IMG/VR virus record: IMGVR_UViG_3300042868_007959
Coordinates: 62,001-126,000 of that record
Direction: 5' to 3' (one strand)
Length of the DNA stretch: 64,000 nt
Numbering within the stretch: position 1 is the stretch's first letter; every line of letters starts with the position of its first letter. Made by a program: the position numbers and the translations under genes. The notes under the pieces are model-generated. The model was not told where the DNA came from. It made no database searches and was given only the letters and a program-made list of their open reading frames with translations. This document shows, in pieces, positions 2,422 to 47,024 of the stretch.

Positions 2422-2422
2422 C

Positions 2423-3186: not shown

Positions 3187-3190
3187 GATA

Positions 3191-3481: not shown

Positions 3482-3554
3482 CTATAAATTTTATTTAATT
3501 ATTATTATATTATAAATATAAAAGGGGATTAAAAATCCCCCTCTGAAATAATAT

Positions 3555-3980: not shown

Positions 3981-4028
3981 TTTATTTTTTTTAAATTATA
4001 ATGATAAAAAAATAAATAGTAAAGTATT

Positions 4029-4451: not shown

Positions 4452-4469
4452 TTTATTCTGATTTAAAGG

Positions 4470-4685: not shown

Positions 4686-4790
4686 CTTATTTTGATTTAG
4701 GTAGTTTTTATTAGGATACGGATATTGCAATAATAGCGATAAAAGTAAACCATATGACAACTACGATTATTGTTACTAAATTTGGGTTTT

Positions 4791-4973
4791 TCATCTTTTA
4801 TATATCAAATAAGTTACTACCAAAATAACGATTAAAAGTAATACTGGTATCCACAATGGTGCAGTTACCCACCACCAACTCCAATCAACGTGATTAGTTA
4901 GTTTTAGAACCATAAAAATAAGGAATAGAATCATACCTAATCCTATCCCACTTGATGAACTGTTTTCACTCAT
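4791..4973 (-). CDS. Small membrane protein (LKL..vdWSWWWV.aPLW family common in phages)
   Basis: Two TM segments with WSWWWVTAPLW motif. Confidence 0.75.
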   Translation of the reverse strand: MSENSSSSGIGLGMILFLIFMVLKLTNHVDWSWWWVTAPLWIPVLLLIVILVVTYLIYKR

Positions 4974-4987
4974 AATTTATTATTTAT

Positions 4988-5667: not shown

Positions 5668-6318
5668 TTAATATTCCAAACTTTTAGGTAAAAATAATAG
5701 GGTTGGGTTCTTCTTTTGAATATCTAAGTTTGGGTATTCCTCTTTAAATTTCATCACGTCAAACTTCTTAGTGATTAAATGGTACCCATTTTTAGTTGGG
5801 ATAATAGCTTCAATCTTTGGACCAACTTCATGTCCAATTGGTATTCCTACCTCGTCAAATTTAACTTTGGTAATTGGATTACATTTATATTCAATAAATG
5901 CCATCATTACTGGACTAGGTATATGACTATCATCGATATCTATAATCCACCTCTTCTCGTGAGTTTTAATTTGACCAACAACTGAGTCAAATAAACCTTG
6001 TTGTTTATCTACACCATCTCTAATACGTTCTGCCAGTATCGCCAACATATTAAGGGAAACATCCTTATGGTTTTGTTTCTGAACATGAATATATGCCCTC
6101 GCCTTAAACATTTCACAAAGTTGTTTAATCTCGTCATACCTCTTTTCAAGATGATCAATAGATTCTATACAGTAAGTTTTAATTGTTCTTACTGACTGAT
6201 GATTATCTCTTTCCCCTTCAGGTTGATCCTTTTTACGTTTAAAAACATATAACATATAAAAATCACCTTTATCAGTGAAATGTAATAGTGGTTTTATTAA
6301 TTCTAAGTTATCTATCAT
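5668..6318 (-). CDS. Conserved phage protein with AEP/primpol-like motifs
   Basis: WIIDIDD (hhhDhD) and TKNGYHL (sxH) resemble AEP motifs I and II. Confidence 0.6.
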   Translation of the reverse strand: MIDNLELIKPLLHFTDKGDFYMLYVFKRKKDQPEGERDNHQSVRTIKTYCIESIDHLEKRYDEIKQLCEMFKARAYIHVQKQNHKDVSLNMLAILAERIRDGVDKQQGLFDSVVGQIKTHEKRWIIDIDDSHIPSPVMMAFIEYKCNPITKVKFDEVGIPIGHEVGPKIEAIIPTKNGYHLITKKFDVMKFKEEYPNLDIQKKNPTLLFLPKSLEY

Positions 6319-7370
6319 AGTTTCCTAAATTTTGGTTTTAAAGCACTCCATATAATTTTATCATAATCTTTACCATCCCACATCGCAAACATAATTGCCT
6401 TTGCAATTGGATGGTGATTCTTAATATGTTCCGCAAATTCTTTCTTAGTTGGTTCTACTTCTATATCACCGTATTTACCAAATCTAAAATAATCATAAGT
6501 TTTACCTAGTTGGTTATAGTATTGGTACCAATGATACCCCAAACTACTGGCGTAAGTTTTAATCTTACCATAAAATTCATCAGGAACATCTTTAAGAAAA
6601 TCTTCTATTTTACCACCACTAGATAAAATTTCCCATACAGTTGTAGTTGATACATTTGTCATTATTTTATGTAATCTGAGATATTCTTCACCCTTTATCT
6701 TCATTCTGTCACCATTAGAAAATTTAACTACATAACCCTCTTCATCATCTTTTATTATATTTTTTAAGGTAGTAAAATCAGTTATGCCATCATATTTTTT
6801 AACTACTCTGAATCCTATATTTTGAATTAAATTTTTTAATCTTAAATCTACATCTTCACTATGTAAGACAACTTCATTTTCGGTTTTAGTATTTATCATA
6901 CCTAATAACACTAAATCCTCAAAATCATACTGTACCACTATTCGATTATCATCGTATATGATTTCAAATAAATAAGTATAATCTTTATGTAACTTATCGT
7001 AATCATATTTTTGTAATAAATCAAAACCCTTTATAGATTGTTCAGAAGTGAATGAACCTCTAGTTGCCAATACCCATTGATCACCATAATGAAATAGAAT
7101 TCCTAATGAACCATCCATTTTATCATAAACGTCAAATTCAGATGTGGTAGTATGTTTACCTTCTTCCATATTAAAGAATTTTTTAAATGGTCTACCAACA
7201 ATATCACCATCGGAATTTGTTACTAATCCCCTACACATCAGAGTTATATTATCCCATAATGATTCGTATTGTACTTTTTCACTATAATTCCAAATAGTTA
7301 GATCCAAAGTAGGGTGAACTTGTTTATGTAATAAACCCTTATCAAAATATTCATTTAAAATTTCATTCAT
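6315..7370 (-). CDS. T4 Rnl1-type RNA ligase
   Basis: CRGLV, PFKKFFN, motif I KMDGSLG, LFEII, EGYVV, KIKGEEY. Confidence 0.92.
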   Translation of the reverse strand: MNEILNEYFDKGLLHKQVHPTLDLTIWNYSEKVQYESLWDNITLMCRGLVTNSDGDIVGRPFKKFFNMEEGKHTTTSEFDVYDKMDGSLGILFHYGDQWVLATRGSFTSEQSIKGFDLLQKYDYDKLHKDYTYLFEIIYDDNRIVVQYDFEDLVLLGMINTKTENEVVLHSEDVDLRLKNLIQNIGFRVVKKYDGITDFTTLKNIIKDDEEGYVVKFSNGDRMKIKGEEYLRLHKIMTNVSTTTVWEILSSGGKIEDFLKDVPDEFYGKIKTYASSLGYHWYQYYNQLGKTYDYFRFGKYGDIEVEPTKKEFAEHIKNHHPIAKAIMFAMWDGKDYDKIIWSALKPKFRKL

Positions 7371-9875: not shown

Positions 9876-10757
9876 TTAAAATACATTAATTTGTGTTAAA
9901 TAATCTTTGTTAACAGTATAGTCTGAATTATATTCTACATCATAATTTGATCTTGAATTAGTACAATATATGTGTTTAATATGCTGACTTAATTCATATA
10001 ATCCGTTTGAGAAAATACCGTGAGTTATTGCTAATGAAACATTTGCCAATGGTCTTTCTTTATGTATTGCCTTAGCGATTTCGATAAAGGTTCTTCCACC
10101 GTCACAAATATCATCAACAATTAAAAAGTCATTAATTTTAGAATCGATAAAATCTAATGGAACATGAGTACTTAAAATTTTACCACTTTTAATGTCTCTA
10201 TGTTTTGACGCAATTAAAATATCTCTATCGTATTCTAATTTTTCTGCCAAATTATAAACCTTTTTCAATGCTCCCGCATCTGGTGAAACCAAAGTAAATG
10301 AATCAACTGCATTCCTTAGACTAATTTTATTATATTCTGTTAATGCAACTTTGATGAACCAAGAATTATCTGAAACTATTAAGTTGTTAATACAGGCAGG
10401 CGCTACATCACTATGAACATCAATACATGTTACTGATTCATAATTTTGTGCATTTATAATAGGTGCAATAACATCTCTTAAATAAGATGTACCACCAGTT
10501 ACAAATTGTCTATCACTTCTCGCCCCTAATATGTATGGGATGTATAAATGTATTTTCTCCACTTTTAGATTTCTAAGTGCCTTAGTTGCACATAATATTA
10601 ATTCTAAATCTTTAAAAGAATTAAACCTAGACTTAATGGTTACTTCTTTTATAGGAAAAGTATGACTCCCAATAACGATATCTTGTTGTCCATCAGGAAA
10701 TTTAGATATCTTATATTTTATATTACTATTTTCTAAATTTTCTAAATTTAATTTCAT
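9876..10757 (-). CDS. prs: Ribose-phosphate pyrophosphokinase-like (Prs/Adps)
   Basis: FPDGQ, PYILGARSDR, DVHS, VSPDAGA, IVDDICDGGRTF, THGIFS. Confidence 0.92.
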   Translation of the reverse strand: MKLNLENLENSNIKYKISKFPDGQQDIVIGSHTFPIKEVTIKSRFNSFKDLELILCATKALRNLKVEKIHLYIPYILGARSDRQFVTGGTSYLRDVIAPIINAQNYESVTCIDVHSDVAPACINNLIVSDNSWFIKVALTEYNKISLRNAVDSFTLVSPDAGALKKVYNLAEKLEYDRDILIASKHRDIKSGKILSTHVPLDFIDSKINDFLIVDDICDGGRTFIEIAKAIHKERPLANVSLAITHGIFSNGLYELSQHIKHIYCTNSRSNYDVEYNSDYTVNKDYLTQINVF

Positions 10758-13717: not shown

Positions 13718-13878
13718 AATTAGCGGAGATTTCATCCCATCCATTGATCACCCAAGGACTCGTTTCTAATGTATTTGGCACTCCGCCATTGTAAGTTTTC
13801 TGTTGCTTACGCCCTCATTCGTGGACTTCCGACATCCCAATGAGTTTTACCGTCCTATCGGAGTCAGGTAACCGCTTG

Positions 13879-13970
13879 TAGTCAGGACAGGACTCGAACC
13901 TGTATGTACAGTTATACAGAACTGCACATCCCTGTATGGATATTTGCGTCTACCATTTCGCCACCTGACT
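13879..13970 (-). ncRNA. tRNA-scaffold element F (non-canonical anticodon arm)
   Basis: AGTCAGG/CCTGACT acceptor, Leu-type D arm, ACAGG-TTCGAGT-CCTGT T arm; 42-nt insert with two hairpins. Confidence 0.8.
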
Positions 13971-14080
13971 ATAAAAACACACTCTTCAGCTTTCTACTTC
14001 CAGCTCCGAGAAATTATATATAACTTAGCCCATCTCACCGCTGTATGGGAACTGAAGTTTATGTGTCTTAAGGTTGAGAG

Positions 14081-14157
14081 CCTCTGTGTTGTAATGTTAA
14101 TTCTACATTTACATTATTTATTACGTTTAATTCCTTTCTCAAGGGAACAACACAATA
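14081..14157 (-). repeat. Structured repeat copy 1 (GAGA-tetraloop three-way motif)
   Basis: Shares identical 12-nt and 25-nt blocks with 15604-15674. Confidence 0.75.
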
Positions 14158-14161
14158 ATTA

Positions 14162-14237
14162 TAGATAGGGTGGGATTCGAACCCACAATGAACAACCTTA
14201 AAAGGACTCGGCACCGTGCCTCATTACGCTCCTACCT
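14162..14237 (-). ncRNA. tRNA-scaffold element G
   Basis: AGGTAGG/CCTATCT acceptor, GTGGG-TTCGAAT-CCCAC T arm; no canonical anticodon arm. Confidence 0.7.
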
Positions 14238-14243
14238 ACACTG

Positions 14244-14320
14244 AACTACCCATAGGACTCGAACCTACAACCCTTCGGCCTTAGTGACCAATGTGCAAAC
14301 CAATTTACACCATAAGTAGT
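14244..14320 (-). tRNA. tRNA with CTA anticodon (amber-suppressor-like; non-canonical A33)
   Basis: ACTACTT/GGGTAGT acceptor; TTGGT-CA CTA AG-GCCGA anticodon arm; canonical T arm. Confidence 0.65.
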
Positions 14321-14416
14321 TAATCAAGAAAACATATCAGAAATTACTGGTACCAAATCTCACTGCGATATATGATACATCTTCTTGTTAGGATTGGTTA
14401 ATTACTCCTATCTTTG

Positions 14417-14488
14417 TACTCCCACGGAGAATCGAACTCCGATTTTCAGGATGAAAACCTGATGTCCTAACCGTTAGACGATGGGAGC
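14417..14488 (-). tRNA. tRNA-Glu(TTC)
   Basis: Full cloverleaf; TCAGG-TT TTC AT-CCTGA. Confidence 0.95.
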
Positions 14489-14707
14489 AAATTGTGACAA
14501 CCTTTGGGTTCGATTGTCACTTTTACGTGAAAGGAGTGATCAGACCCTCTAACATCACGAGTGTAAGTTTTTCACATTAAACTATCTCTACAAAACGTCA
14601 GTTTTTATCGCCCTTAAACTGAATAAACGGTTTGACACTTTGTATCCCCTTTTTTAAGTGCGTGATACATCTTCTCTCAAACTGAACTCTACTGAGAACA
14701 CTCCCTG

Positions 14708-14779
14708 CGGTCTATGAGAGAATCGAACTCTCGGCACATCCGTGACAGGGATGTATGTTAGCCACTACACTAATAAACC
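14708..14779 (-). tRNA. tRNA-Asp(GTC)
   Basis: CATCC-CT GTC AC-GGATG; G73. Confidence 0.95.
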
Positions 14780-15004
14780 AAGTTTCCCCACTCTGAGATT
14801 ACAAGTGAGTAGTCGTATCGGTTTTTTTTCTATTTGAAAAACCTGATGGGCATCCCCGTTGAAAAAGTCAGCTCTATACGTCAGCAGTGCAGAACCTCGC
14901 TACTGTTATTCTGAATCGATTGCCTTAGGGAGGCGTTTTTTAACCCTATCCATTGTTAAATGAGTCTTGGATAAAAGACTACTGAGTATCTCTTACTCAT
15001 TATG

Positions 15005-15161
15005 TAGTTGGGGTAGGACTCGAACCTACATAAACACTTTGAAATTTACCTACGCACCGTGAGGTAGTGTTCTTCATCATTTGCATTGCCTAACCATTGA
15101 TCGATTTTACGTTTCGGCTGCCGTGCGTGTCAATAAGCGTCTACCATTTCGCCACCCAACC
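15005..15161 (-). ncRNA. tRNA-scaffold element E (107-nt structured insert)
   Basis: GGTTGGG/CCCAACT acceptor, GCGAAATGGTAGACGC D arm, GTAGG-TTCGAGT-CCTAC T arm. Confidence 0.8.
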
Positions 15162-15209
15162 ATACTACATCTCCTTTCGATTCTATAAGGAATCTACTCC
15201 GTTCTGTTG

Positions 15210-15283
15210 TACACCCGCCAGGATTCGAACCTGGGACCTATTCATTAGAAGTGAATTGCTCTATCCAGCTGAGCTACGGGTGC
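15210..15283 (-). tRNA. tRNA-Arg(TCT)
   Basis: ATTCA-CT TCT AA-TGAAT. Confidence 0.95.
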
Positions 15284-15502
15284 AAATAAAAGATGATAAA
15301 TGGATTTATCAGGAATCTGGCTATAACCATAAACACTTCCTATAATTTCTATACTATTGTCATTAGCGTATATGAGCTTCACACACCATTAGAGAGTCGG
15401 GTTGTTACATCAATACAATTAAGATCGAATACCTTTCCTTAGTGTGTACCTTTGCGTCACGTCTCTCCACGCTTACCATTCTACGCTTTGTATCATCTTT
15501 TG

Positions 15503-15586
15503 TACTCGAATCGGGACTTGAACCCGAACGGGCAATTGCCCACAAGATTTTAAGTCTGGCGTGTCTACCGATTCCACCATCCGAGC
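15503..15586 (-). tRNA. tRNA-Leu(TAA)
   Basis: CCAGA-CT TAA AA-TCTTG; long variable arm. Confidence 0.95.
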
Positions 15587-15603
15587 TTATGAGGGTGAGA
15601 AGT

Positions 15604-15674
15604 CCTCTGTGTTGTGAGTTTTAGAACCAAAGGAACCGCACCCATCCATCCTTTCTCAAGGGAACAACACAATA
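15604..15674 (-). repeat. Structured repeat copy 2
   Basis: See copy 1 at 14081-14157. Confidence 0.75.
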
Positions 15675-15685
15675 TTCTTTATAAC

Positions 15686-15703
15686 CAATATGTCAATGAA
15701 CTT
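15686..15703 (-). promoter_or_regulatory. boxA-like antitermination element
   Basis: AAGTTCATTGACATATTG directly after the promoter, before tRNA cluster 1. Confidence 0.65.
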
Positions 15704-15714
15704 ATTTTCTTTTT

Positions 15715-15745
15715 CAAAGTTAAATATAAAAAACCAAATTGTCAA
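15715..15745 (-). promoter_or_regulatory. Bacteroidota-type sigma70 promoter
   Basis: TTGACA-17 nt-TAACTTTG (-33 TTG / -7 TAnnTTTG consensus). Confidence 0.75.
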
Positions 15746-15764
15746 TTATTTTTAAACTTTTTTT

Positions 15765-16025
15765 TTATTTCCTTTTTGATAATATGTCATCAATCTTCTG
15801 TAATGTTTCTGGATCTGTTATTGGTAAAAGAGAAATAATATCTAATCGTGTTTTCATTTCTTCTTTTAACCCCCAACCACTACCACAGGTTTTTGCTTGT
15901 TCACCAAACATATTAATAAACTGATCCTCAACAACACTTCTCAATGGATAATCACCACCAAAAGGTACTTTACTTCTGTCAATAGGACCTATTTTACAAA
16001 ACCAATATTCTAAATTATTTTCCAT
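15765..16025 (-). CDS. Hypothetical protein
   Basis: ORF track; starts 15 nt after tRNA-like element D. Confidence 0.75.
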   Translation of the reverse strand: MENNLEYWFCKIGPIDRSKVPFGGDYPLRSVVEDQFINMFGEQAKTCGSGWGLKEEMKTRLDIISLLPITDPETLQKIDDILSKRK

Positions 16026-16040
16026 TTATTTTATTTTTTG

Positions 16041-16112
16041 TAGTTAGAGTAGAACTCTAACCTACGACTTAGATATTATGAGGATCTAGATATACCACTG
16101 TTCTACCCCGAT
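16041..16112 (-). pseudogene. Degenerate tRNA-like element D (CAT loop, broken acceptor)
   Basis: TAGAT-CCTCATAAT-ATCTA; 3' end GTAGGTTAGAGTTCTACTCTAACTACA resembles the scaffold family. Confidence 0.6.
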
Positions 16113-16117
16113 ATATA

Positions 16118-16387
16118 TTATTTCAATAAACTTATAACATACGGTTTAAATATGGTTAATTTAGTTCCGTCTGAATTATAATACCAGACAGAATCCTTGT
16201 TCATACCGTATATCGTATCAGTATATGCAACTGCTGGTCGAAGTTCTTGTGTTACATTTACTTCATTCCAATCAACTTGTCTTTCGATCATGACTGGAAC
16301 TTGACCTTCAATTTTGTACTTATAAGTTTTACCTTTACAAGAAAGGAATAAAACCGTTAATACTGTTGTATAAAATACCTTTTTCAT
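16118..16387 (-). CDS. Putative lipoprotein
   Basis: MKKVFYTTVLTVLFLSC lipobox. Confidence 0.75.
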   Translation of the reverse strand: MKKVFYTTVLTVLFLSCKGKTYKYKIEGQVPVMIERQVDWNEVNVTQELRPAVAYTDTIYGMNKDSVWYYNSDGTKLTIFKPYVISLLK

Positions 16388-16401
16388 AACTATTTGTTTT
16401 G

Positions 16402-16518
16402 TAGTCAGAACAGGATTCGAACCTGTGTTTACACTTTACTTGTATTAGTTGTGTCCGATAGATTGGGTATCAATACATTTCCCGCACCACCTGCTCTTAA
16501 CCACTGAGCTACCTGACT
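16402..16518 (-). ncRNA. tRNA-scaffold element C
   Basis: AGTCAGG/TCTGACT acceptor, class-I D arm GCTCAGTGGTTAAGAGC, ~66-nt insert, ACAGG-TTCGAAT-CCTGT. Confidence 0.8.
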
Positions 16519-16525
16519 ATTTTAT

Positions 16526-16597
16526 TTAACGATTCGGAAACCAATATTCCCCTATATAGTAACCATTTTCATTACACCATTGTTCTAATTCATTCAT
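16526..16597 (-). CDS. 23-aa micro-ORF MNELEQWCNENGYYIGEYWFPNR
   Basis: Manual translation; exactly fills the gap between elements B and C, with an A-rich leader. Confidence 0.55.
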   Translation of the reverse strand: MNELEQWCNENGYYIGEYWFPNR

Positions 16598-16612
16598 AAT
16601 TTTTATTTTTTG

Positions 16613-16737
16613 TAGTCAGGACAGGATTCGAACCTGTATGATAACTTATGAGCAGTCTTAACGGGTCTTTCGAGGTTACTCGCGTTATCTTTACTATTAA
16701 CCTTTATTCATGCGTCTACCAATTCCGCCACCTGACT
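16613..16737 (-). ncRNA. tRNA-scaffold element B
   Basis: AGTCAGG/CCTGACT, GCGGAATTGGTAGACGC, 74-nt insert with GATAAC/GTTATC stem, canonical T arm. Confidence 0.82.
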
Positions 16738-16742
16738 ATTTG

Positions 16743-16937
16743 TTAATCTTGTCTTGAGTTAATATAACCAAATACATTTTCACCAAAAACAGATTTCATT
16801 GCCGTTTCAAAAATGTAATGGTTGTAATCATTGTCTTCATAGTATTCTTCATCATTATCAACGAAATCAAGGTATTCTTGACAGATTTTTTTTAATTCAT
16901 CTAAATTTGGTTTTTCTAATTGATGTGGTTTTTCCAT
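16743..16937 (-). CDS. Hypothetical protein
   Basis: ORF track; lies between elements A and B. Confidence 0.75.
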   Translation of the reverse strand: MEKPHQLEKPNLDELKKICQEYLDFVDNDEEYYEDNDYNHYIFETAMKSVFGENVFGYINSRQD

Positions 16938-16953
16938 GTTATTTTATTTTTTG

Positions 16954-17035
16954 TAGTCAGGACAGGATTCGAACCTGTAACATAACAATCGCTTTCAACC
17001 TTCTAGTTAGCGTCTACCAATTCCGCCACCTGACT
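16954..17035 (-). ncRNA. tRNA-scaffold element A
   Basis: Frame identical to B; 31-nt insert without a canonical 7-nt anticodon loop. Confidence 0.8.
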
Positions 17036-29628: not shown

Positions 29629-29661
29629 ATTTTTAATTACACCGAATTCGGTATAATTGAG

Positions 29662-29736
29662 TTCCCCCGACAGGATTCGAACCTGTGGCCCGTACATTAA
29701 AAGTGTAATGCTCTAAACCAACTGAGCTACGAGGGA
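29662..29736 (-). tRNA. tRNA-Lys(TTT)
   Basis: TTACA-CT TTT AA-TGTAC. Confidence 0.93.
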
Positions 29737-29976: not shown

Positions 29977-30052
29977 TGGCGGTCCATGACGGTTACGATC
30001 CGTCTACTCTACCGTGACAGGGTAGGATGATAAGCCATTTCACCAATAGACC
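29977..30052 (-). tRNA. tRNA-Asp(GTC), atypical T-loop, CCA encoded
   Basis: CTACC-CT GTC AC-GGTAG; T-loop ATCGTAA. Confidence 0.88.
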
Positions 30053-30056
30053 ATTT

Positions 30057-30202
30057 AAATGATAATCAGGATTAGATTATATACGTGCTCTACCAACTGA
30101 GCTACCGCCGCCCCGAAGGACAACGGACAGGATTCGAACCTGCGACACCGAGCTTAAAAGGCTAATGTAATTGTTGCTGAAACAATCCTTTTATTATCAT
30201 TT
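30057..30202 (-). ncRNA. Y-RNA-like (YrlA-like) RNA with circularly permuted tRNA-Lys module
   Basis: Terminal stem AAATGATAAT/ATTATCATTT; order: CT-TTT-AA hairpin, T arm, acceptor CCGTTGTCC-TTCG-GGGCGGCGG, D arm GCTCAGTTGGTAGAGC. Confidence 0.78.
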
Positions 30203-30203
30203 G

Positions 30204-30289
30204 AGGAAGAGGTAGGATTCGAACCTACGGTACCTTTCAGTACGCTAGTTTTCAAGACTAGTACAATAAACCAACTCTGTCACTCTTCC
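30204..30289 (-). tRNA. tRNA-Ser(TGA)
   Basis: CTAGT-CT TGA AA-ACTAG; long variable arm. Confidence 0.95.
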
Positions 30290-31419: not shown

Positions 31420-31498
31420 AAATGTTCAGGAAGACTTTTTGTTTTCAAATTTCCGATCTTGATTTTTTTATTTTGCTGAAATCTTCCTTTTAACATTT
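31420..31498 (-). ncRNA. Minimal Y-RNA-like stem (no tRNA module)
   Basis: AAATGTT-AAAAGGAAGA-TTTCAGCAA...GTCTTCC-TG-AACATTT; same architecture as the 30057-30202 terminal stem. Confidence 0.65.
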
Positions 31499-31598: not shown

Positions 31599-32138
31599 CT
31601 AAACATTTATTAAACCCGCATGTATTTCTGAATGACAATTAGAACACACTAAAATACATTTATCTACTTCATATTTTAATTTTTCGAAGGATAAACTTTT
31701 ACCTGATATTGTAAAATCTTTACTATTAGGATTTAAATGGTGGAATTCTAACGCATTAAAACATTTGTTATATCCACAAATTTGACACTTACCACCTTTA
31801 TATTCTACTAATCTAATTTTCACTCTCTTTCTCCATAAAATAACAGATTCAGAAGATGTCATTGTTTTAATTCTATCTTTAGTTTTAATATATTTTTTTA
31901 AAGTATCAAAAGAACGTTTAGTTATTTTAGATACTTTTTTTATTGAACCTAGTTCATCATATAATTTTTGATATAATTCAATGTCCTCTTTAGTAGTTTT
32001 TTGATTATTATCACCTAAACCATTCATTTTACAATGATAAGAAACTGTAGACATTGCACACCCTAAAATCTTAGTTATCTCTTTATACGTTTTACCTTCT
32101 TTTCTTAATTCTAAAATTTTTTTCGAATACCTTTCCAT
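31599..32138 (-). CDS. HNH homing endonuclease with N-terminal HTH
   Basis: KTYKEITKILGCAMSTVSYH; GGKCQICGY...LEFHHLNP...KCILVCSNCHSEIH. Confidence 0.9.
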   Translation of the reverse strand: MERYSKKILELRKEGKTYKEITKILGCAMSTVSYHCKMNGLGDNNQKTTKEDIELYQKLYDELGSIKKVSKITKRSFDTLKKYIKTKDRIKTMTSSESVILWRKRVKIRLVEYKGGKCQICGYNKCFNALEFHHLNPNSKDFTISGKSLSFEKLKYEVDKCILVCSNCHSEIHAGLINV

Positions 32139-36314: not shown

Positions 36315-36809
36315 TTATACCATTAAAAATTGTTTCCATTCTTCTTTAATTATACCATTCATTCTTTCTATGAATTGGATGTATGTCGGAGTAAATGGTT
36401 TTCTTAAAAATACCATATCCGCTTCTTCAGGTGTTCTATCATCTTTTTTTAGATTGCATATTCCACAACAAGTAACTAAATTTTTCCAACTATTATCCCC
36501 ACCTCTAGACTTAGGAAGAACATGATCGATAGTTAAATTTTTATTTGTTCCACAGTATACACATTTATGTCCATCTCTCCTAAAAATATTAAATCTACTT
36601 AAAGGAACTTTTTTATATGGCATATAAATAAATCTATTTAATCTTATAACTGAAGGTCTATTAAAATTCTTAAAACTCGATATGATAGGGTTAGACTCGT
36701 CAGAATATACTATCTCCGCCTTTCCCTTGTAAACTAATTTAAACCCTCTATTAAGTGTGGTTACATTTAATGGGGTATAGTCATTATTTAAAACTAATAC
36801 CTTTTCCAT
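36315..36809 (-). CDS. HNH endonuclease (McrA-like/HNH_5 type)
   Basis: VLVLN..Y.PL, PSVIRL, RRDGHKCVYCG, TIDHVLPKSRGG, CCGICN.KK. Confidence 0.92.
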   Translation of the reverse strand: MEKVLVLNNDYTPLNVTTLNRGFKLVYKGKAEIVYSDESNPIISSFKNFNRPSVIRLNRFIYMPYKKVPLSRFNIFRRDGHKCVYCGTNKNLTIDHVLPKSRGGDNSWKNLVTCCGICNLKKDDRTPEEADMVFLRKPFTPTYIQFIERMNGIIKEEWKQFLMV

Positions 36810-37623: not shown

Positions 37624-37794
37624 AATCTTTTTATCTATAAAGTAAAATTAATAAAAAAATCCGAATCTGCCAAATTTTTTTATATAAATATTTGTTAAAA
37701 ATAAAAAAGTCCCGAATTAACGGGACTTTAAAGGGCCGATAGGATCACTATCAACTTCCACCACTTCGTTTTTAAGGAACAAAGAAACCTAATG

Positions 37795-38192
37795 TGGAGA
37801 TGGAGGGAGTCGAACCCTCGTCCAATCAAATTGCCATTAAAAATTCATTCACAAGCTTAGTTCATTTTTCTTAATGAACAAAATATTTGGTTTTATTTAT
37901 AACATGGTTACCAACAACCCTGTTTCGATAATTGTTTAGAGAGTTTTACCGTCAACTCTATTTTTTACACCTTTCTGTTTCTAGGTAAGTGTGACCCACC
38001 GATTAAACTAATTCCATTAATTCAATCTCTTCAACCACCGCTGAGCGAGTGATAGAAGTTGGGATACTCATCATATCCTCTGTGTTGTATGCGTTTGCAT
38101 TTATATTTTGATAGGTGTTTAAGGGTTTCCATCTAACCCTGCTTGCATCATTTCAAACTCAACCTTTGACTGTCAAATCCAAAACCATCCCC
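37795..38192 (-). ncRNA. ssrA: tmRNA
   Basis: 5' GGGGATGGTTTTGGATTTGAC; 3' GAGGGTTCGACTCCCTCCATCTCCA; G3:U70; resume context ATAAAT-GCA; tag ORF 38003-38098; no encoded CCA. Confidence 0.93.
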
Positions 38193-40324: not shown

Positions 40325-41230
40325 TTATTTATTTTCTTTATAAAGTTTCAATAGTCTTTCTTTAGCGTAATCACAATAATCCTCAACTAAATCAATCCCT
40401 ATATACTGTCTTCCCATTTTAGATGACGCATACGGTGTAGTTCCTGTACCTGAAAAATTATCTAAAACAATATCATTCGGTTTAGAATATAAGTCAATAA
40501 AATAATTTGCGAACTCTGTTGAGAAAGTTGCTTCGTGTCCTTCTACTTTACCATCATTATTTTTAGCCTCTATAAAATTATAATAGGTATTAAAATATTT
40601 TTGTCCTGTTTTAGAAAGTGACGATACTATTTTATTGGTGGCAAAATTAGGTGTTTTCGCAAATATATAAACCATCTCAACAATTCTAGTTAACCTATTT
40701 GGTTGACCACTTAATGGTACACAAGATTTCTTTTTCCAAGCTGCGGTATCATATATCTCTAATGAAGTGTTTTCAAATACTTCGTTAATTAATAGATAGG
40801 GTAACGATGGATTAAATGTAGTGTAACTATAATTAAATACGATTACACCATCATCAGTTAATATCCTTTCATATTGTTTAAAAACATCTATTAACCAACT
40901 AATGTATTCTTTAACAGGTTGGTTATCCTTTATAAGGTCTTTCGCACCTGGATATTTATGATTATCTTTTCTTATAGATGCTAAATAGGGTGGAGATGTT
41001 AAAATTAAATTAATACTCTTATCTTTAATTTTTTTCATTGTCTCAACAGTATCTCCACAGTATATCTGATTGGTTATTAATCCAACATCTACAGAATTAA
41101 CAACATTAGTTACTTCTTCAGTAGTGTCAACAATAACGTCATTTTGTTTATCGATAATAATTTTTTCCATAGTAATTTCATCAAACAAACTTAATTGTTC
41201 ATTTTTTCTTTTTTTAGGTATTCTTCCCAT
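40325..41230 (-). CDS. N4-C/N6-A DNA methyltransferase (beta class)
   Basis: LTSPPY ... VLDNFSGTGTT. Confidence 0.92.
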   Translation of the reverse strand: MGRIPKKRKNEQLSLFDEITMEKIIIDKQNDVIVDTTEEVTNVVNSVDVGLITNQIYCGDTVETMKKIKDKSINLILTSPPYLASIRKDNHKYPGAKDLIKDNQPVKEYISWLIDVFKQYERILTDDGVIVFNYSYTTFNPSLPYLLINEVFENTSLEIYDTAAWKKKSCVPLSGQPNRLTRIVEMVYIFAKTPNFATNKIVSSLSKTGQKYFNTYYNFIEAKNNDGKVEGHEATFSTEFANYFIDLYSKPNDIVLDNFSGTGTTPYASSKMGRQYIGIDLVEDYCDYAKERLLKLYKENK

Positions 41231-41235
41231 AATAA

Positions 41236-42144
41236 TTAAAATATATGTTTAAATAAATCTAACTGAGTCCCATATGGTGGTAATATATATTTGTTTTCAC
41301 CATAATTCATAATGAGGATTTCTTGACCCATATTTTGTTTAACCCCACTTTTAGCGGCTGCCGCCTTTGCAAACTCTTTTGTTTCCCAAACATAATCGTT
41401 TTTAGGGAACCATTCCCTAAGTAATGGGAAATCATAATAACTTAAAGAGAATTTACCCTTTATAGATTTTAACGAAATTGCTAACCTTTCGTGATCACTT
41501 CTATCAAAATCATGATTAGAATAATAATTTTCTGTTTTCCAATAAGGTGGATCCACATAAAAATAAGTTGTTTCTGAATCATACTTCTGTATTACATCAT
41601 TAAAATCTAAATTTTCAACAAATGAAATCCTATCAAAGTGTTCTCTATATTTTGGATCTTTTAATTTGTCCATAAAAATTAAAATCTTACATCTATATTT
41701 ACCTTTATAATCCATATAATTAGATGTTTCAGGTTTAGATCCAGAAAATATTTGTGTTAAGACATACACATATTTTGCAGCAATTTCATATTTATTTTCT
41801 TCAGTAATTGGAATACCAAAGGAACCGAATAATTCCTTTTGGTATTCCGCAAACATTTCTGAATAAATTTGAGGTGTTTCTGATATACCTAATTGTTGGC
41901 AAGGATAGTTTGAAAGTTCATCCCATAACCTATCATAGTCTTTACAACAATTTAATAGATTCGCATTTAACCCATTAAAATCATTATAGACAACTGTTTT
42001 AAGATTTGGGTACTTTTTCAAATCCATCTTAAAGAATACCCAAAACATACCACTAAATGGTTCAACATATGTTTCTATGTCTTCTGAAATAAATGGAACG
42101 ATCCATTTAGATATTCTCGCCTTACCTCCAATATAACTTATCAT
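41236..42144 (-). CDS. dam: Dam-family (D12) adenine methyltransferase
   Basis: YIGGK, YVEPFSG, VYNDFN, FYVDPPY. Confidence 0.9.
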   Translation of the reverse strand: MISYIGGKARISKWIVPFISEDIETYVEPFSGMFWVFFKMDLKKYPNLKTVVYNDFNGLNANLLNCCKDYDRLWDELSNYPCQQLGISETPQIYSEMFAEYQKELFGSFGIPITEENKYEIAAKYVYVLTQIFSGSKPETSNYMDYKGKYRCKILIFMDKLKDPKYREHFDRISFVENLDFNDVIQKYDSETTYFYVDPPYWKTENYYSNHDFDRSDHERLAISLKSIKGKFSLSYYDFPLLREWFPKNDYVWETKEFAKAAAAKSGVKQNMGQEILIMNYGENKYILPPYGTQLDLFKHIF

Positions 42145-42811: not shown

Positions 42812-43807
42812 TCAAATTTTTAATGATTTTATTTTTTCTTTTTCTTCTTTATCTATATTTGAAGGTATGTCAACCCATATTTCTAATAACATATCCCCTG
42901 TCATATTATCCCTTACAAACCCTTTATTAGGAACTCTTAACATTGTACCTACTTTAGTACCTGAAGATATTTTAAATCTTATTTTTTTATCCATAGTATC
43001 TACCTCAATAGAATCATTACCTAATACTAAATCCTTATAGGAAAGATTTACTTTCTGGTATATGTCTAATCCCACCCTTTTAAATTTTTCATGTAGAATT
43101 TGTACTACATTAATTAATAAGTCACCTTCTAAACCATTCCTAATTGCGTTACCCATATTATAAACTCTCAATGTTTCACCATCCATAATTCCTTTAGGTG
43201 TATCAAATTCAAATGTCTTATCTTCTTTAATTACACCATTACCTACACAGGTACCACATTTTTTTGTAATTATATTCCCTTCACCATTACACTTAGGACA
43301 GTGAACAGTACTCTGCATTTTACCAAATGGGGTATTCTGAACTTGATTAACCATACCAATCCCATTACAAGTGTCACAACTAATACTATCACCACCAGTC
43401 CCACCACAAGGTGTACATTTTACAAATTTTTTATATATAATTTTTTTATTCGACCCATTATATATTTCTTCTAAAGTGAGTTTAAGATTTATCCTTATGT
43501 CCCCGCCTTTGGATCTCCTATTCTTAATACTACCGTAAAAAGAGGATAATATGTCTTCCATATTATCACCAGCAAATGGATTAGTCCTACCATCTGCAGT
43601 ACCAAACCTATCATAATTTAATTTTTTTTCTTTATCGGACAATACCGAATACGCTTCCGCAATAGATTTAAATTTTTCTTCTGACTCTTTATTATCTGGA
43701 TTTAGATCTGGATGATGTTCTTTAGATAGTTTCCTATACGCCTTTTTTATTTCAGTTTCATCGGCATTTTTACCCACACCTAAAATATTATAATAATCTT
43801 TACTCAT
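42812..43807 (-). CDS. dnaJ: DnaJ chaperone
   Basis: [11 protein letters not shown], four CxxCxGxG repeats, C-terminal domain. Confidence 0.96.
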
Positions 43808-44986: not shown

Positions 44987-45060
44987 AAATTATATTTTGT
45001 CAATTTTATTATTTTAAATAATTTTAATAAAAATATTTTAAACTGTAAATGTTATAAAAT

Positions 45061-45092
45061 AAAAAAGGGAAAGTATTTCTACTCTCCCTTTT
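45061..45092 (-). terminator. Intrinsic terminator
   Basis: AAAAGGGAGAGT-AGAAAT-ACTTTCCCTTTTTT. Confidence 0.75.
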
Positions 45093-45097
45093 AAATT

Positions 45098-45590
45098 TTG
45101 GTGTCGGAATGGTGATCCTTCTTTTATTTTCGGTGGTAGAGTACCCACCCTAAGTATTTTAATCCGTTCTAGTTCGGATGTCTTATTATTTAGTTGAGAC
45201 AAAACCAACTACTATTTTTTACTTGTAGTAAACAAGAGGTATGTTTTACGACCTAAAGTGTAGGGGTTTCCTACGTTTAAACTCTCCTATGGTCGCCACT
45301 TTATATTTTTTTTCGAGTAAAGTGGTAAAACTCTGATCTATCTGCTTTTTTTCTAGTAAGTGTTTGCAGAAACCATTCGTTTATCGGACTTAAAGGGAAT
45401 TCGTATATTCCCAATCCATTACACCTAATAACATTGTGGTATCGGAATTGTCTGACACTTTACATAACTCTGAGTGGTCCCCCGCTTTCACGGTTTACAC
45501 CCTTATGGTTATATGGGTTATCAAAGCCCCTCTTTCTTAGCTGAATTGTAGTTTTTTAATTTTGCTGCAATTATTCCTTAGCTACCACAA
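45098..45590 (-). ncRNA. Unidentified ~490-nt multi-hairpin RNA region
   Basis: No ORF; more than 10 hairpins; long-range TTGTGGTA/TACCACAA pairing; bounded by boxA and a terminator; 5' part carries the AAGGA..TT.CAGCAA Y-like motif. Confidence 0.6.
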
Positions 45591-45607
45591 ATATTTTCAA
45601 AGAACTT
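45590..45607 (-). promoter_or_regulatory. boxA-like element
   Basis: AAGTTCTTTGAAAATATT immediately after the DUF2828 stop codon. Confidence 0.6.
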
Positions 45608-45608
45608 A

Positions 45609-47024
45609 TTATACAGTTATTACACTATATCTTTTATCATTAACAGTATCCATCATTATGGATTCTGGTGTCATATTTTTACCCCCTAATAGAGACTTTA
45701 GTATTGATGGACTAAATCCCGAAACTAATGCAGTTCCGTTTTTATCAAACTCAACTGGAAAGTTACCACCACTAGAATTTAAATTCCAATATACTACATT
45801 AGGCATTTTATATCCTGCCTCTTTATACATTTCCTCAATCATCGATTGTGCACCCAAACTATTTCTTCTAGTTGCCTGATTGAATTGCATATCAGATAAA
45901 ATTAATATCTTAGTCGGCATAAATTCCTCACTAATATTATTGTTTTTTGCCTGAGTTAGAATTAAGTTAAATACTTTTTCTAAATTAGTACTCATACCCC
46001 AATCTGAACTTATTAATTGTGATAGTCTTTGTTCTAAACTACCTTTTAAATACTGTAATTCAGGACTTTCGGAAAATGTAATAAATGCATCTTTGAAGTT
46101 ACCTTCACTTCTTTCAGAAATATACATACCTAATGATACTGCAATATCCATACAAGTTAGGTTTGGGTTACCTCCCGCTGGACATTCCATAGACCCTGAA
46201 ACGTCAACAACTGGTAAAATTCTTTCTTCAGATCCCTCCATCCAATTAGGTAGTGACTCCCACTGTTTACTATTTACTACTTCATCACCACCCATCTTCA
46301 TAGATTTTATAATGTCGTATGGGTAAACCGCACCTGCATTAACTTTTGCAGTTCCTTCAATTAGAGAATTTTTATACTCCTCATATCTTTCAATATCATT
46401 TCTTTTAAATGATTTTTGGTATCTTGATGATGCCAATGAAGGAATTTTTGAGTAGTCGATTGATTCCCAATCTTTTGAACACATCTTAGTTTCTACAACA
46501 TTAGTTAAATCAACTAACATTTTTCTATATTGTTTAGGAGTAGTTTTAAATAATCTTCTAAGTTTATTTGCCACTTCACCTTTTCTAGGCATCCATTTTG
46601 CACAAAGTCCATCACCGTTAGTTAATGCGGTTTTGATAATTTCAAACATTTCATCCTCTAATTCGGTACCCATAAGGACTAATATATCATCCCATCTACC
46701 AAACTCTGAAATAAAATTTATATTTTTTCTAAGTGTTATAGGTGAGTTGACAGATAGATACTCAATAACGTCTCTAAATACTTTTCTTTCACCCGCACCA
46801 CTTCTAATATCTCTAACCCAAAAAAGTATTTTTGTTGCCACTAAAGGATTTTCTAAAAAGGCTTGATTAAAAAGTTTATTAACCAATTCTTTAGATTTTC
46901 CTCTCATCGCCCCAATAGCGAAAAATAAATCCACACACTTATTAAGTGTCGTAGGATTGGTAACCATACCATTATCGGTTAATGTTACATTTTGTTCTTC
47001 CGTATTAGTTAACTGAGTGTCCAT
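45609..47024 (-). CDS. DUF2828-family protein (helical N-terminus + vWA; TROVE/Ro60-like architecture)
   Basis: RDIRSGAGER, GRWDD, AKWMPR, NAGAVYPYDI, VDVSGSM MIDAS, ILSDMQFN, YWNL, VSGFSP. Confidence 0.85.
   Translation of the reverse strand: MDTQLTNTEEQNVTLTDNGMVTNPTTLNKCVDLFFAIGAMRGKSKELVNKLFNQAFLENPLVATKILFWVRDIRSGAGERKVFRDVIEYLSVNSPITLRKNINFISEFGRWDDILVLMGTELEDEMFEIIKTALTNGDGLCAKWMPRKGEVANKLRRLFKTTPKQYRKMLVDLTNVVETKMCSKDWESIDYSKIPSLASSRYQKSFKRNDIERYEEYKNSLIEGTAKVNAGAVYPYDIIKSMKMGGDEVVNSKQWESLPNWMEGSEERILPVVDVSGSMECPAGGNPNLTCMDIAVSLGMYISERSEGNFKDAFITFSESPELQYLKGSLEQRLSQLISSDWGMSTNLEKVFNLILTQAKNNNISEEFMPTKILILSDMQFNQATRRNSLGAQSMIEEMYKEAGYKMPNVVYWNLNSSGGNFPVEFDKNGTALVSGFSPSILKSLLGGKNMTPESIMMDTVNDKRYSVITV

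What the first reader, a model, noticed from the sequence alone, without database searches (positions are those of the whole stretch)
30057..30202. Circularly permuted tRNA-Lys embedded in a Y-RNA-like stem
Read 5'-3': closing stem, AAAAGGATTG-TTTCAGCAA, anticodon-like hairpin AGC-CTTTTAA-GCT, variable loop, T arm GCAGG-TTCGAAT-CCTGT, 9-bp acceptor-like helix capped by UUCG, D arm, closing stem. The 3' half thus precedes the 5' half and there is no chargeable end. Known: bacterial YrlA Y RNAs are tRNA mimics with a loop-closed acceptor joined to a Ro60-binding stem. Unlike my recollection of YrlA, this one retains a UUU anticodon loop, the target of PrrC-type nucleases. Inference: a Ro-tethered decoy or sensor for anti-tRNA-Lys defences.
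Basis: partly seen in the sequence, partly recalled or inferred. Interest (0 to 1): 0.85.

Follow-up and report, generated by a model that had tools for sequence, protein, structure and literature searches.

The report
Phage Y RNA shaped like tRNA-Lys
A large phage encodes, inside its tRNA gene array, a small RNA that is a complete but circularly rearranged, unchargeable copy of lysine tRNA joined to a docking stem for the phage's Ro60-like protein. It is a variant of bacterial Y RNAs that, unlike the described ones, keeps a genuine anticodon loop.

Summary
On the minus strand, 30202-30053 fills the gap between tRNA-Ser and tRNA-Asp. It folds as terminal helix, AAAA/UG internal loop, 6-bp inner helix, CAGCAA motif, then a full tRNA cloverleaf in permuted order. 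The acceptor is capped by UUCG. The anticodon stem is split between nt 28 and 29, and the loop is CUUUUAA. With the module removed and the cap opened, ARAGORN calls it tRNA-Lys(UUU). More than 25 distinct homologs in viral metagenomes keep every helix through compensatory changes. In the loop, U33 and U36-A37-A38 stay fixed and positions 34-35 vary (UUU, GUU, UCU, UGU, AUU, GAU). The helix + CAGCAA + UG module recurs beside Ro-like (DUF2828) genes: 44 of 80 loci on the gene strand versus 2 on the opposite strand. The window's DUF2828 protein models as a Ro60 ring. Rfam YrlA matches only the T/acceptor/D core (33 bits; gathering score 69), and described YrlA lacks an anticodon loop. Verdict: a new variant of the YrlA-type Y RNA, very probably the partner of the phage Ro-like protein. 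The decoy or sensor role against anticodon nucleases is plausible but untested.

The parts
30053..30202 (-). Whole RNA: tRNA-Lys(UUU)-shaped Y RNA, filling the gap between tRNA-Ser and tRNA-Asp
30193..30202 (-). Terminal (outer) helix, 5' strand; pairs with 30057-30066
   Evidence: MFE and centroid; same layout in the paralog at 31420-31498
30057..30066 (-). Terminal (outer) helix, 3' strand
30183..30192 (-). AAAA internal loop plus inner module helix 5' strand GGAUUG
   Evidence: covaries (GGAUUG/CAAUCC, GGAUGG/CCAUCC and others)
30067..30074 (-). Inner module helix 3' strand UAAUCC followed by the conserved UG
30174..30179 (-). CAGCAA motif (family consensus C-N-G-C-A/G-A) just 3' of the inner helix; presumed Ro-like protein contact
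30151..30163 (-). Anticodon-like hairpin: nt 29-31 AGC, 7-nt loop CUUUUAA, nt 39-41 GCU
30149..30150 (-). C42-G43, pairing with C27-G28 (30084-30085) to complete the 5-bp anticodon stem
   Evidence: (YrlA alignment pairs these)
30144..30148 (-). Variable loop GUGUC (G46, C48 as in tRNA)
   Evidence: sequence inspection
30127..30143 (-). T arm GCAGG-UUCGAAU-CCUGU
30105..30126 (-). Acceptor-like helix, 9 bp (7 + 2), closed by a UUCG tetraloop; no free 3' end
   Evidence: 12 unrelated helix versions, 95% canonical
30084..30104 (-). U8-A9, D arm GCUC-AGUUGGUA-GAGC, A26, C27-G28
30075..30083 (-). 3' linker UAUAUAAUC (family consensus UAYA + A-rich)
31420..31498 (-). Second, simple Y-like RNA (no tRNA domain) between tRNA-Tyr and tRNA-Trp, with the same outer helix / AAA(A) / inner helix / CAGCAA / UG layout
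45609..47024 (-). Ro60-like protein (Pfam DUF2828 + DUF7788; PHROG 850 'RNA-binding protein'), presumed protein partner
6315..7370 (-). T4 Rnl1-type RNA ligase (context: tRNA repair capacity in the same genome)

Best explanation
The element is a phage Y RNA of the YrlA type, made from the tRNA operon and freed when the flanking tRNA-Ser and tRNA-Asp are processed. Its terminal module (outer helix, AAAA/UG internal loop, 6-bp inner helix, CAGCAA) is the docking site for the phage's Ro60-like protein (45609-47024). Its body is a full tRNA-Lys(UUU) look-alike. All tertiary-contact nucleotides and an authentic 7-nt anticodon loop are present. The acceptor end is sealed by UUCG, so it cannot be charged. 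The chain ends leave the fold between nt 28 and 29 of the anticodon stem. Shown: the anatomy, the selection on every helix, the anticodon-type conservation of the loop, the Ro60 fold of the protein, and the genomic link between this module and Ro-like genes. Inferred: that this RNA binds this protein, and that the RNP presents a tRNA-Lys anticodon arm to a factor that reads it. I consider the most likely use to be in the conflict over tRNA cleavage, either as bait for anticodon nucleases or as a handle that brings the Ro-like protein (and repair by the phage's Rnl1-type ligase) to that site. That last step carries about 0.25-0.3 on its own.
For: Anatomy and fold. The YrlA core matches at 33.2 bits, E 1.3e-5. 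The de-permuted sequence is called tRNA-Lys(ttt). Homologs: 21 distinct permuted relatives from one scan, and more from loop-unconstrained scans. The acceptor-like helix has 12 unrelated versions with 80/84 canonical cells, versus 0.54 with shuffled partners. The module helix has 8 versions, all canonical. Hairpin stems AGC/GCU, AGG/CCU and AGA/UCU covary. The loop keeps Y32-U33 and U36-A37-A38 while positions 34-35 vary: UUU, GUU, UCU, UGU, AUU, GAU. Arrays that carry a mimic also carry a canonical tRNA with the same anticodon. The module sits next to Ro-like genes in FelixO1, Listeria LP-048, Staphylococcus S-CoN_Ph3, Campylobacter F358, Enterococcus EfV12-phi1 and metagenomic L010 and L141. 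In 80 Ro-like loci, 44 have the module within 800 nt on the gene strand, versus 2 on the opposite strand and 1-5 in shuffles. A second RNA in the window has the same module. Protein: AF2 pLDDT 82.8, and the top five PDB fold matches are all Ro60/TROVE. The DxSxS MIDAS motif is invariant. Literature: YrlA mimics the D arm, T arm and acceptor and is encoded next to Ro60 (PMC4201824). A Felixounavirus Ro60-like gp130 counters the Ppl defence, and its authors guessed that some neighbouring 'tRNAs' are Y RNAs (PMC11482910). Thermus phage Ro60 binds phage Y-like RNAs (PMC12135203).
Against: In this phage the RNA lies 15 kb from the Ro-like gene, so pairing rests on analogy and on the shared module. 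The score is below Rfam's YrlA gathering threshold. The module motif is CAGCAA, not the published GNCGAAN0-1G. There are no expression, binding or cleavage data. The anticodon census is biased by the search patterns used.
Confidence: 0.72

Rival explanations
1. Y RNA as above, but the tRNA-like body only stabilises the RNA or tethers Ro to an exonuclease such as PNPase. On this view the anticodon hairpin is a leftover of the tRNA ancestor with no reader of its own.
For: This is the default view for YrlA and Yrn1 (PMC4201824; PMC12135203). Many Ro-linked phage RNAs with the same module carry quite different, non-tRNA bodies.
Against: The loop keeps U33 and U36-A37-A38 across relatives whose stems and acceptor helices have been completely rewritten. 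Changes are confined to positions 34-35 and give real anticodons. A vestige would drift or be lost, as in described YrlA.
Confidence: 0.18
2. A circularly permuted tRNA gene in the manner of the alga Cyanidioschyzon merolae. The ends would be joined by an RNA ligase, the cap opened by RNase P and 3' trimming, and CCA added, giving a working tRNA-Lys.
For: The de-permuted sequence is a perfect tRNA-Lys. The phage has an Rnl1-type ligase. Relatives exist with the same insert but a normal open acceptor end, some with encoded CCA. M. smegmatis YrlA is cut by RNase P and receives CCA (PMC4201824).
Against: A canonical tRNA with the same anticodon sits in the same array here and in relatives. Caps are stable tetraloops on helices of 5-10 contiguous base pairs, with no conserved discriminator or CCA. 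No bulge-helix-bulge motif is visible at the 28/29 junction by inspection. The stem module is shared with non-tRNA RNAs next to Ro-like genes.
Confidence: 0.06
3. The stem module binds some protein other than the Ro-like one, or none. The RNA would act alone as a sponge for lysyl-tRNA synthetase or for anticodon-loop modification enzymes (t6A37, mnm5s2U34).
For: All permuted relatives keep U36-A37-A38, the context of t6A37 (own knowledge). Lys and Asn synthetases read the anticodon (own knowledge). In this phage the gene and the RNA are not adjacent.
Against: The module is strongly and strand-specifically linked to Ro-like genes. A second module-bearing RNA and a conserved noncoding stretch beside the Ro-like gene occur in the same genome.
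Confidence: 0.1
4. A rearranged tRNA pseudogene or an assembly artefact.
For: tRNA arrays are recombination-prone, and homing endonuclease genes sit in this array.
Against: The same architecture occurs on dozens of independent contigs with compensatory changes in all helices. Two Singulisphaera (Planctomycetes) genomes carry it in a YrlA-TROVE-RtcB operon.
Confidence: 0.01

Closest known systems
YrlA (Rfam RF02553), the tRNA-like Y RNA of Salmonella, Mycobacterium and many other bacteria and some phages
   Same: Same order (stem, V loop, T arm, loop-closed acceptor, D arm, stem). Nearly identical D-arm and T-loop sequences, and the same 'CGUAU' after the D arm. It is a partner of a Ro60-type protein. 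The YUA preceding the clamp corresponds to YrlA's conserved YUAY.
   Different: It keeps a hairpin with a 7-nt anticodon-type loop, where YrlA goes straight from YUA into the stem. The docking motif is CAGCAA + UG rather than GNCGAAN0-1G. It scores 33 bits against a gathering score of 69. It is encoded in a tRNA array 15 kb from the protein gene. The partner is of the DUF2828 clade, not Pfam TROVE.
Deinococcus radiodurans Yrn1
   Same: A Y RNA with tRNA-like features, modelled with a possible 'anticodon arm' (PMC4201824).
   Different: In Yrn1 that arm has a 6-nt loop, the D arm is doubtful, and the arms are oriented differently. Here the loop has 7 nt with U33 and A37, and the whole cloverleaf is intact.
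Circularly permuted tRNA genes of Cyanidioschyzon merolae and split or permuted archaeal tRNAs
   Same: The 3' half is encoded before the 5' half. Relatives with an insert in place of the permutation coexist.
   Different: No BHB splice motif is visible. The breakpoint is inside the anticodon stem (28/29). The acceptor is sealed by a stable tetraloop. The element is redundant with a canonical isoacceptor. The flanking helix is a protein-docking module.
Yrl1/Yrl2 of Thermus phage phiLo and the Ro60-like gp130 of Felixounavirus Bas63
   Same: A phage-encoded Ro60-type protein with phage-encoded Y-like RNAs. gp130 has a reported anti-defence phenotype.
   Different: The phiLo RNAs are simple stem-bulge-stem RNAs with a CGAA motif. 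No Bas63 RNA has been defined. None is reported with an anticodon loop.
tmRNA and viral tRNA-like structures (TYMV TLS)
   Same: RNAs that copy the tRNA L-shape for a non-decoding purpose.
   Different: Those keep a chargeable CCA end and replace or lack a true anticodon loop. This one does the opposite.

Membership tests
YrlA / Y RNA-like (RF02553) | Reaches the curated Rfam gathering score (69 bits) | tested here: not met
   No hit at gathering. Local hit of 33.2 bits to model positions 24-84 only. Relatives score 28-47 bits.
YrlA / Y RNA-like (RF02553) | tRNA-like domain in the order T arm, loop-closed acceptor-like stem, D arm, with conserved D/T sequences | tested here: met
YrlA / Y RNA-like (RF02553) | 5'/3' ends form a stem carrying the Ro60-binding motif GNCGAAN0-1G | tested here: inconclusive
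   The stem is present and covaries. The motif is CAGCAA (relatives: CNGCAA, CAGCGA), which is similar but not the published motif. It is conserved beside phage Ro-like genes.
YrlA / Y RNA-like (RF02553) | Encoded next to a Ro60 ortholog | tested here: not met
   It lies 15 kb from 45609-47024 in the window. However, module-bearing relatives are adjacent in L001, L010, L141, FelixO1 and others.
YrlA / Y RNA-like (RF02553) | No anticodon loop (as described for YrlA) | tested here: not met
   A hairpin with loop CUUUUAA is present and conserved.
YrlA / Y RNA-like (RF02553) | Bound by the Ro60 protein in vivo | not testable with these tools
   Needs immunoprecipitation or EMSA.
Ro60 / TROVE proteins (for the partner, 45609-47024) | HEAT-repeat ring plus vWA domain with a MIDAS motif | tested here: met
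   AF2 model pLDDT 82.8. Foldseek top five are all Ro60/TROVE, E 8e-9 to 6e-6, TM about 0.6. D274-S276-S278 is invariant.
Ro60 / TROVE proteins (for the partner, 45609-47024) | Matches Pfam TROVE (PF05731) | tested here: not met
   Pfam gives DUF2828 + DUF7788 only. There is a weak sequence hit to phage TROVE 9l5y/9kop, E 0.0024.
Canonical tRNA | Contiguous cloverleaf with free 5' and 3' acceptor ends, recognised by tRNA finders | tested here: not met
   Not called by ARAGORN. The Rfam tRNA model gives 15 bits. It is called tRNA-Lys only after in-silico de-permutation.
Permuted tRNA genes (C. merolae type) | 3' half upstream of the 5' half | tested here: met
Permuted tRNA genes (C. merolae type) | Bulge-helix-bulge motif at the junction, and maturation to a functional tRNA that the genome needs | tested here: not met
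   No BHB is seen by inspection of the 28/29 flanks here and in L002. A canonical tRNA-Lys(UUU) is present at 29661-29736, and likewise in relatives. Maturation itself is not testable here.

The most novel reading that the evidence does not exclude
The RNA is a new kind of anti-defence device. On this reading the Ro-like RNP displays an authentic, unchargeable tRNA-Lys anticodon arm (in other phages Asn, Arg, Thr or Ile). That arm would intercept host anticodon nucleases as bait. Alternatively, being cut would report the attack and trigger Ro-like or ligase action. The wider implication is a whole class of phage 'tRNA genes' with inserts, or in permuted order, that are not for decoding.
Probability: 0.2. 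Interest if true: 0.9.

Novelty: new variant of a known kind. Interest (0 to 1): 0.68.

Why it matters
What the tRNA-like domain of bacterial Y RNAs is for is an open question. A widespread natural variant that keeps a complete anticodon arm points to recognition of the anticodon loop, and that can be tested directly. The arm's identity switches between phages while U33 and U36-A37-A38 stay fixed. The work also gives a usable signature (helix, CAGCAA, UG) for the RNA partners of the very common phage DUF2828/Ro-like proteins. One of those proteins already has an anti-defence phenotype but no known RNA. Finally, it shows that some long or odd 'tRNAs' in phage arrays are the same RNA in another circular permutation, which matters for annotation.

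Tried and rejected
- Megablast of the tRNA region against the phage collection found nothing.
- Blastn hits to adjacent tRNA pairs (T arm of one, D arm of the next) were set aside as trivial look-alikes.
- Loci fetched through the neighbouring ORF were useless, because that ORF is a mobile HNH endonuclease.
- The 8-bp hairpin of the MFE fold was rejected. Its outer pairs are not kept in relatives and would consume the V loop.
- MAFFT and RNAalifold could not align the length-variable acceptor helices. Their covariation was therefore counted from anchored parses in a script, and no covariance model was built.
- An Rfam scan around the Ro-like gene found nothing.
- I looked for reports that PARIS-type nucleases also target Asn or Thr tRNAs and found none.
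- Literature searches for anticodon-bearing Y RNAs, phage Y RNA decoys or DUF2828 function returned no such description. Chen et al.'s supplementary tables are not held, so I cannot exclude that such variants are drawn there.

Full report
**1. What is there**

The window is part of a large phage genome. It is identical to part of a 254-kb IMG/VR contig (L008). All 28 tRNA genes called by ARAGORN, and a tmRNA gene, lie on the minus strand.

The finding occupies exactly the 150-nt gap between tRNA-Ser (30203-30289) and tRNA-Asp (29977-30052). Read 5' to 3' on the minus strand, it contains:
- a 10-bp terminal helix (30202-30193 with 30066-30057);
- an asymmetric internal loop, AAAA on the 5' side and UG on the 3' side;
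- a 6-bp inner helix, GGAUUG with UAAUCC;
- UUU-CAGCAA and a 10-nt A/U-rich linker;
- the hairpin AGC-CUUUUAA-GCU, then CG, then V loop GUGUC;
- T arm GCAGG-UUCGAAU-CCUGU;
- a 9-bp helix closed by UUCG;
- U8-A9, D arm GCUC-AGUUGGUA-GAGC, A26 and CG;
- a 9-nt linker beginning UAUA, and the closing strands.

The fold is much more stable than shuffles (-44 kcal/mol, z = -3.6, 0 of 200).

**2. How the cloverleaf closes**

The CG after the hairpin (nt 42-43) pairs with the CG after A26 (nt 27-28). The 3-bp hairpin supplies pairs 29-41, 30-40 and 31-39. Together these make an ordinary 5-bp anticodon stem with a 7-nt loop, C32-U33-UUU-A37-A38. Its backbone is open between nt 28 and 29, and the two chain ends run off from there into the terminal module.

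The nucleotides used for tRNA tertiary contacts are all in place: U8, A14, G15, G18-G19, G46, C48 and U54-U55-C56. I cut out the module and opened the cap in silico. ARAGORN then calls the 76-mer tRNA-Lys(ttt). As encoded, ARAGORN does not call it, and the Rfam tRNA model gives it only 15 bits.

It is not a recent copy of the phage's own tRNA-Lys at 29661-29736. Identity is 72%, no more than to several other tRNAs.

**3. Relatives and selection**

Pattern scans of IMG/VR gave dozens of loci. Among them are 21 distinct sequences with the same permuted architecture, and further ones came from scans that left the loop free.

| Helix | Distinct versions | Canonical pairing | Control |
|---|---|---|---|
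| Acceptor-like helix | 12 unrelated | 80 of 84 cells | 0.54 mean, 0.75 maximum with strands paired across versions |
| Inner module helix | 8 | all canonical | - |
| T stem | 5 | all canonical | - |
| Anticodon-like hairpin | 3 (AGC/GCU, AGG/CCU, AGA/UCU) | all canonical | - |

RNAalifold on the MAFFT alignment independently recovers the module helix, the hairpin, the T arm and the D arm. Many caps are UUCG tetraloops, and contiguous cap helices run from 5 to 10 bp (one parse stops at 3 bp at an A-C mismatch), with no conserved discriminator or CCA.

The loop behaves like an anticodon loop:
- Position 32 is C or A, U33 is fixed, and U36-A37-A38 are fixed.
- Only positions 34-35 change.
- The triplets seen are UUU, GUU (the commonest), UCU, UGU, AUU and GAU.

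This census is biased by my search patterns, and the sequences are related. It shows the pattern of constraint, not frequencies. Wherever enough of the array was fetched, a canonical tRNA with the same anticodon is also present. The mimic is therefore not needed for decoding.

**4. The same RNA in other topologies**

Vibrio phage D479 and several metagenomic phages carry 'long tRNAs' of 116-136 nt. These have normal open acceptor ends and an insert of about 45-55 nt at the same place, after nt 27-28. In most of them the insert reads UAU + A-rich, a helix closed by a loop, then N-C-N-G-C-A-A and an A/U-rich linker. That is the window's module with the loop and the chain ends exchanged. One group (L034-type) carries a different insert at the same site.

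One such RNA (L010) has the very same AGC-CUUUUAA-GCU-CG. Another (D479) has a GUU version with the same D arm.

A third arrangement, in which the module helix replaces the acceptor stem, occurs in L152 and L153. What is conserved is therefore the spatial combination of a tRNA body and the module, not the position of the ends.

**5. The module marks RNAs of phage Ro-like proteins**

The protein at 45609-47024 matches Pfam DUF2828 + DUF7788 and PHROG 850 'RNA-binding protein'. It has relatives in 711 phage records, some annotated 'Ro-like'.

An AlphaFold model built on 30 homologs has pLDDT 82.8. Its five best PDB matches are all Ro60/TROVE proteins: Thermus phage phiLo, Xenopus (two entries), Deinococcus and human. 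E-values run from 8e-9 to 6e-6, with TM about 0.6 for four of the five and 0.34 for Deinococcus. The vWA MIDAS motif DxSxS is invariant.

Unannotated gaps immediately beside this gene hold one to four RNAs of the form 'helix strand, UUA/UAA, CAGCAA, 30-200 nt, complementary strand, UG'. I saw this in FelixO1, Listeria LP-048, Staphylococcus S-CoN_Ph3, Campylobacter F358, Enterococcus EfV12-phi1 and metagenomic L010. One FelixO1 copy and one in L141 contain a permuted tRNA-like body.

| Where the module was sought (80 loci fetched through the protein) | Loci with the module within 800 nt of the gene |
|---|---|
| Gene strand | 44 (71 copies) |
| Opposite strand | 2 |
| Shuffled flanks | 1-5 |

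One contig appears in both the element set and the Ro-like set (L156 and L104).

The window itself has more of the same:
- A second, simple RNA with the same outer helix / AAA(A) / inner helix / CAGCAA / UG layout lies at 31420-31498 between two tRNAs.
- A noncoding stretch of about 550 nt sits directly downstream of the Ro-like gene. It contains CAGCAA and GAAUGG-UUU-CUGCAA, and it is about 80% identical at the DNA level in seven loci whose proteins are 56-82% identical.

**6. Relation to what is known**

YrlA RNAs are encoded next to Ro60 orthologs in more than 250 bacteria and phages. They mimic the D arm, the T arm and the acceptor stem (PMC4201824). The crystal-structure paper states that YrlA has a closed acceptor and 'lacks the anticodon loop' (bioRxiv 10.1101/312249).

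The Rfam YrlA model aligns to the window's T/acceptor/D core and pairs the two CG dinucleotides, but it reaches only 33 bits against a gathering score of 69. In that alignment the conserved YUA of YrlA is followed directly by the stem. In the window it is followed by the extra hairpin and then the stem. The element therefore looks like YrlA with the anticodon hairpin retained.

The variant is not confined to phages or to DUF2828 partners. Two Singulisphaera (Planctomycetes) chromosomes carry a permuted element with AGG-CUGUUAA-CCU or AGG-CUAUUAA-CCU. A second YrlA-like RNA follows it, then a Pfam TROVE protein and RtcB. Rfam gives 46-47 bits to those elements.

Phage Ro60 homologs that bind phage Y-like RNAs are known from Thermus phage phiLo (PMC12135203). 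The Felixounavirus Bas63 homolog gp130 counters the Ppl defence, and its authors suggested that some neighbouring tRNA genes might be Y RNAs (PMC11482910). I found no paper describing Y RNAs with anticodon loops or the CAGCAA module. Chen et al.'s supplementary figures are not held.

**7. How it most likely works**

Shown:
- The RNA is under selection as a sealed, full tRNA-Lys shape fused to a module.
- That module is genomically tied to Ro60-fold proteins.
- The loop is constrained as an anticodon loop.
- The mimic duplicates a canonical isoacceptor.

Inferred:
- RNase P at tRNA-Asp and 3' processing of tRNA-Ser release it. A terminator-like site lies upstream of tRNA-Ser at 30352-30323.
- The module binds the 45609-47024 protein.
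- The RNP offers a tRNA-Lys anticodon arm to a factor that reads it.

Several facts make the conflict over tRNA cleavage the most likely arena, with the RNA as bait or as a cleavage-sensing handle. tRNA-Lys(UUU) is the substrate of PrrC (own knowledge) and of PARIS AriB (PMC11464382). A related Ro-like gene is an anti-defence gene. Ro/Y/RtcB operons respond to damaged tRNAs in Salmonella (PMC7790460, abstract). This phage carries an Rnl1-type RNA ligase.

This last step is not supported by any direct result. Synthetases and modification enzymes (t6A37, wobble-U enzymes) are equally sequence-specific readers of that loop.

**8. Rivals**

- A functional permuted tRNA gene is unlikely. The isoacceptor is redundant, the caps are tetraloops, no discriminator or CCA is conserved, no BHB is seen, and the module is shared with non-tRNA RNAs.
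- A vestigial hairpin is hard to square with the loop conservation.
- A pseudogene or an artefact is excluded by the comparative data.

**9. Verdict**

The protein partner is well supported by analogy. The decoy or sensor function is open. This is a new variant of a known kind (YrlA-type Y RNA). It has broader implications for phage 'tRNA' annotation and for the function of the tRNA-like domain of Y RNAs.

Noticed in passing
window 31420-31498 (-): A second Y-like RNA without a tRNA body lies between tRNA-Tyr and tRNA-Trp. Its layout is outer helix, AAA(A), 10-bp inner helix, CAGCAA, about 35 nt A-rich, complementary strand, then outer helix. This is the same module layout as the main element.
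   Followed up: partly
window 45055-45608 (-): About 550 nt of noncoding sequence lies directly downstream of the Ro-like gene and ends in a terminator-like hairpin. It is about 80% identical in DNA in seven related loci (L066, L067, L101, L102, L105, L109, L114). It contains CAGCAA and GAAUGG-UUU-CUGCAA with a matching CCAUUC 260 nt later. There is no Rfam match. It is probably one or more large Y-like or other structured RNAs.
   Followed up: partly
window 13879-17035 (-): Four tRNA-like elements share the same acceptor stem (AGUCAGG ... CCUGACU); a fifth, related element with a different acceptor stem lies at about 16040-16120. Several are followed by ACAAAAAAUAAAA and a small ORF. Two of the four (16402-16518 and 16613-16737) are 117 and 125 nt long with large inserts. 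Rfam calls them tRNA but ARAGORN does not. ARAGORN gives one a 4-base anticodon (13878-13970).
   Followed up: no
window 37792-38192 (-): A phage-encoded tmRNA (113 bits) with a 31-residue tag reading frame.
   Followed up: no
window 6315-7370, 7445-8959, 9876-10757 (-): A T4 Rnl1-type RNA ligase lies next to a nicotinamide/nicotinate phosphoribosyltransferase and a phosphoribosyltransferase-domain protein (NAD salvage genes).
   Followed up: no
window 31599-32138 and 36315-36809 (-): HNH homing endonuclease genes: one inside the tRNA array (31599-32138), the other a few kb beyond it, beside the tmRNA gene. A DnaJ homolog is at 42812-43807, and two DNA methyltransferases are at 40325-42144.
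   Followed up: no
L015 (Vibrio phage D479) 1710-3144: At least five annotated or unannotated 'long tRNAs' carry the Y-type module as an insert after nt 27-28. In one case the insert sits inside the anticodon loop. Anticodon-like loops include UUC, GUU, CUU and AGG. Some have discriminators matching the cognate synthetase rules, so they might be chargeable.
   Followed up: partly
L034, L035, L048, L054, L056, L059, L060, L146: These are arrays of tRNAs. Some members (Asn GUU, Cys GCA) carry a different ~53-nt insert at the same 28/29 site. That insert contains a CCC-GCAA-GGG hairpin and ends in GGGUUACUU, the same words that precede the hairpin in the Singulisphaera YrlA-like RNA. L146 is binned in a Bacteroidaceae MAG.
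   Followed up: no
L148 (Singulisphaera sp. Ch08) 2308-5260 (-); L147: A cellular operon with two YrlA-like RNAs (the first with an anticodon-type hairpin), then a TROVE protein, then RtcB. A repeated GGUGGUGCAG(R)AU word may be its Ro-binding motif.
   Followed up: partly
L063 (Listeria phage LP-048) 1942-2493 and 6325-7536: A ROOL RNA match (90 bits, just under its gathering score) lies 1 kb upstream of the Ro-like gene, and an RtcB ligase lies 1.3 kb downstream. Three CAGCAA-module RNAs sit directly upstream of the gene.
   Followed up: no
L155 11895-12070; L152/L153: L155 is a permuted mimic with a UGU (Thr-like) loop and two tandem T arms. In L152 and L153 the module helix replaces the acceptor stem, and the order is D arm, anticodon arm, T arm.
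   Followed up: no
L126, L128, L138 and others, flanks of Ro-like genes: Module-bounded RNAs of 180-230 nt have conserved non-tRNA interiors. One example is a recurring GGGUU-AGA-GGUAAAUG-CCCC hairpin just before the closing strand. This suggests several classes of effector domain on the same docking module.
   Followed up: no
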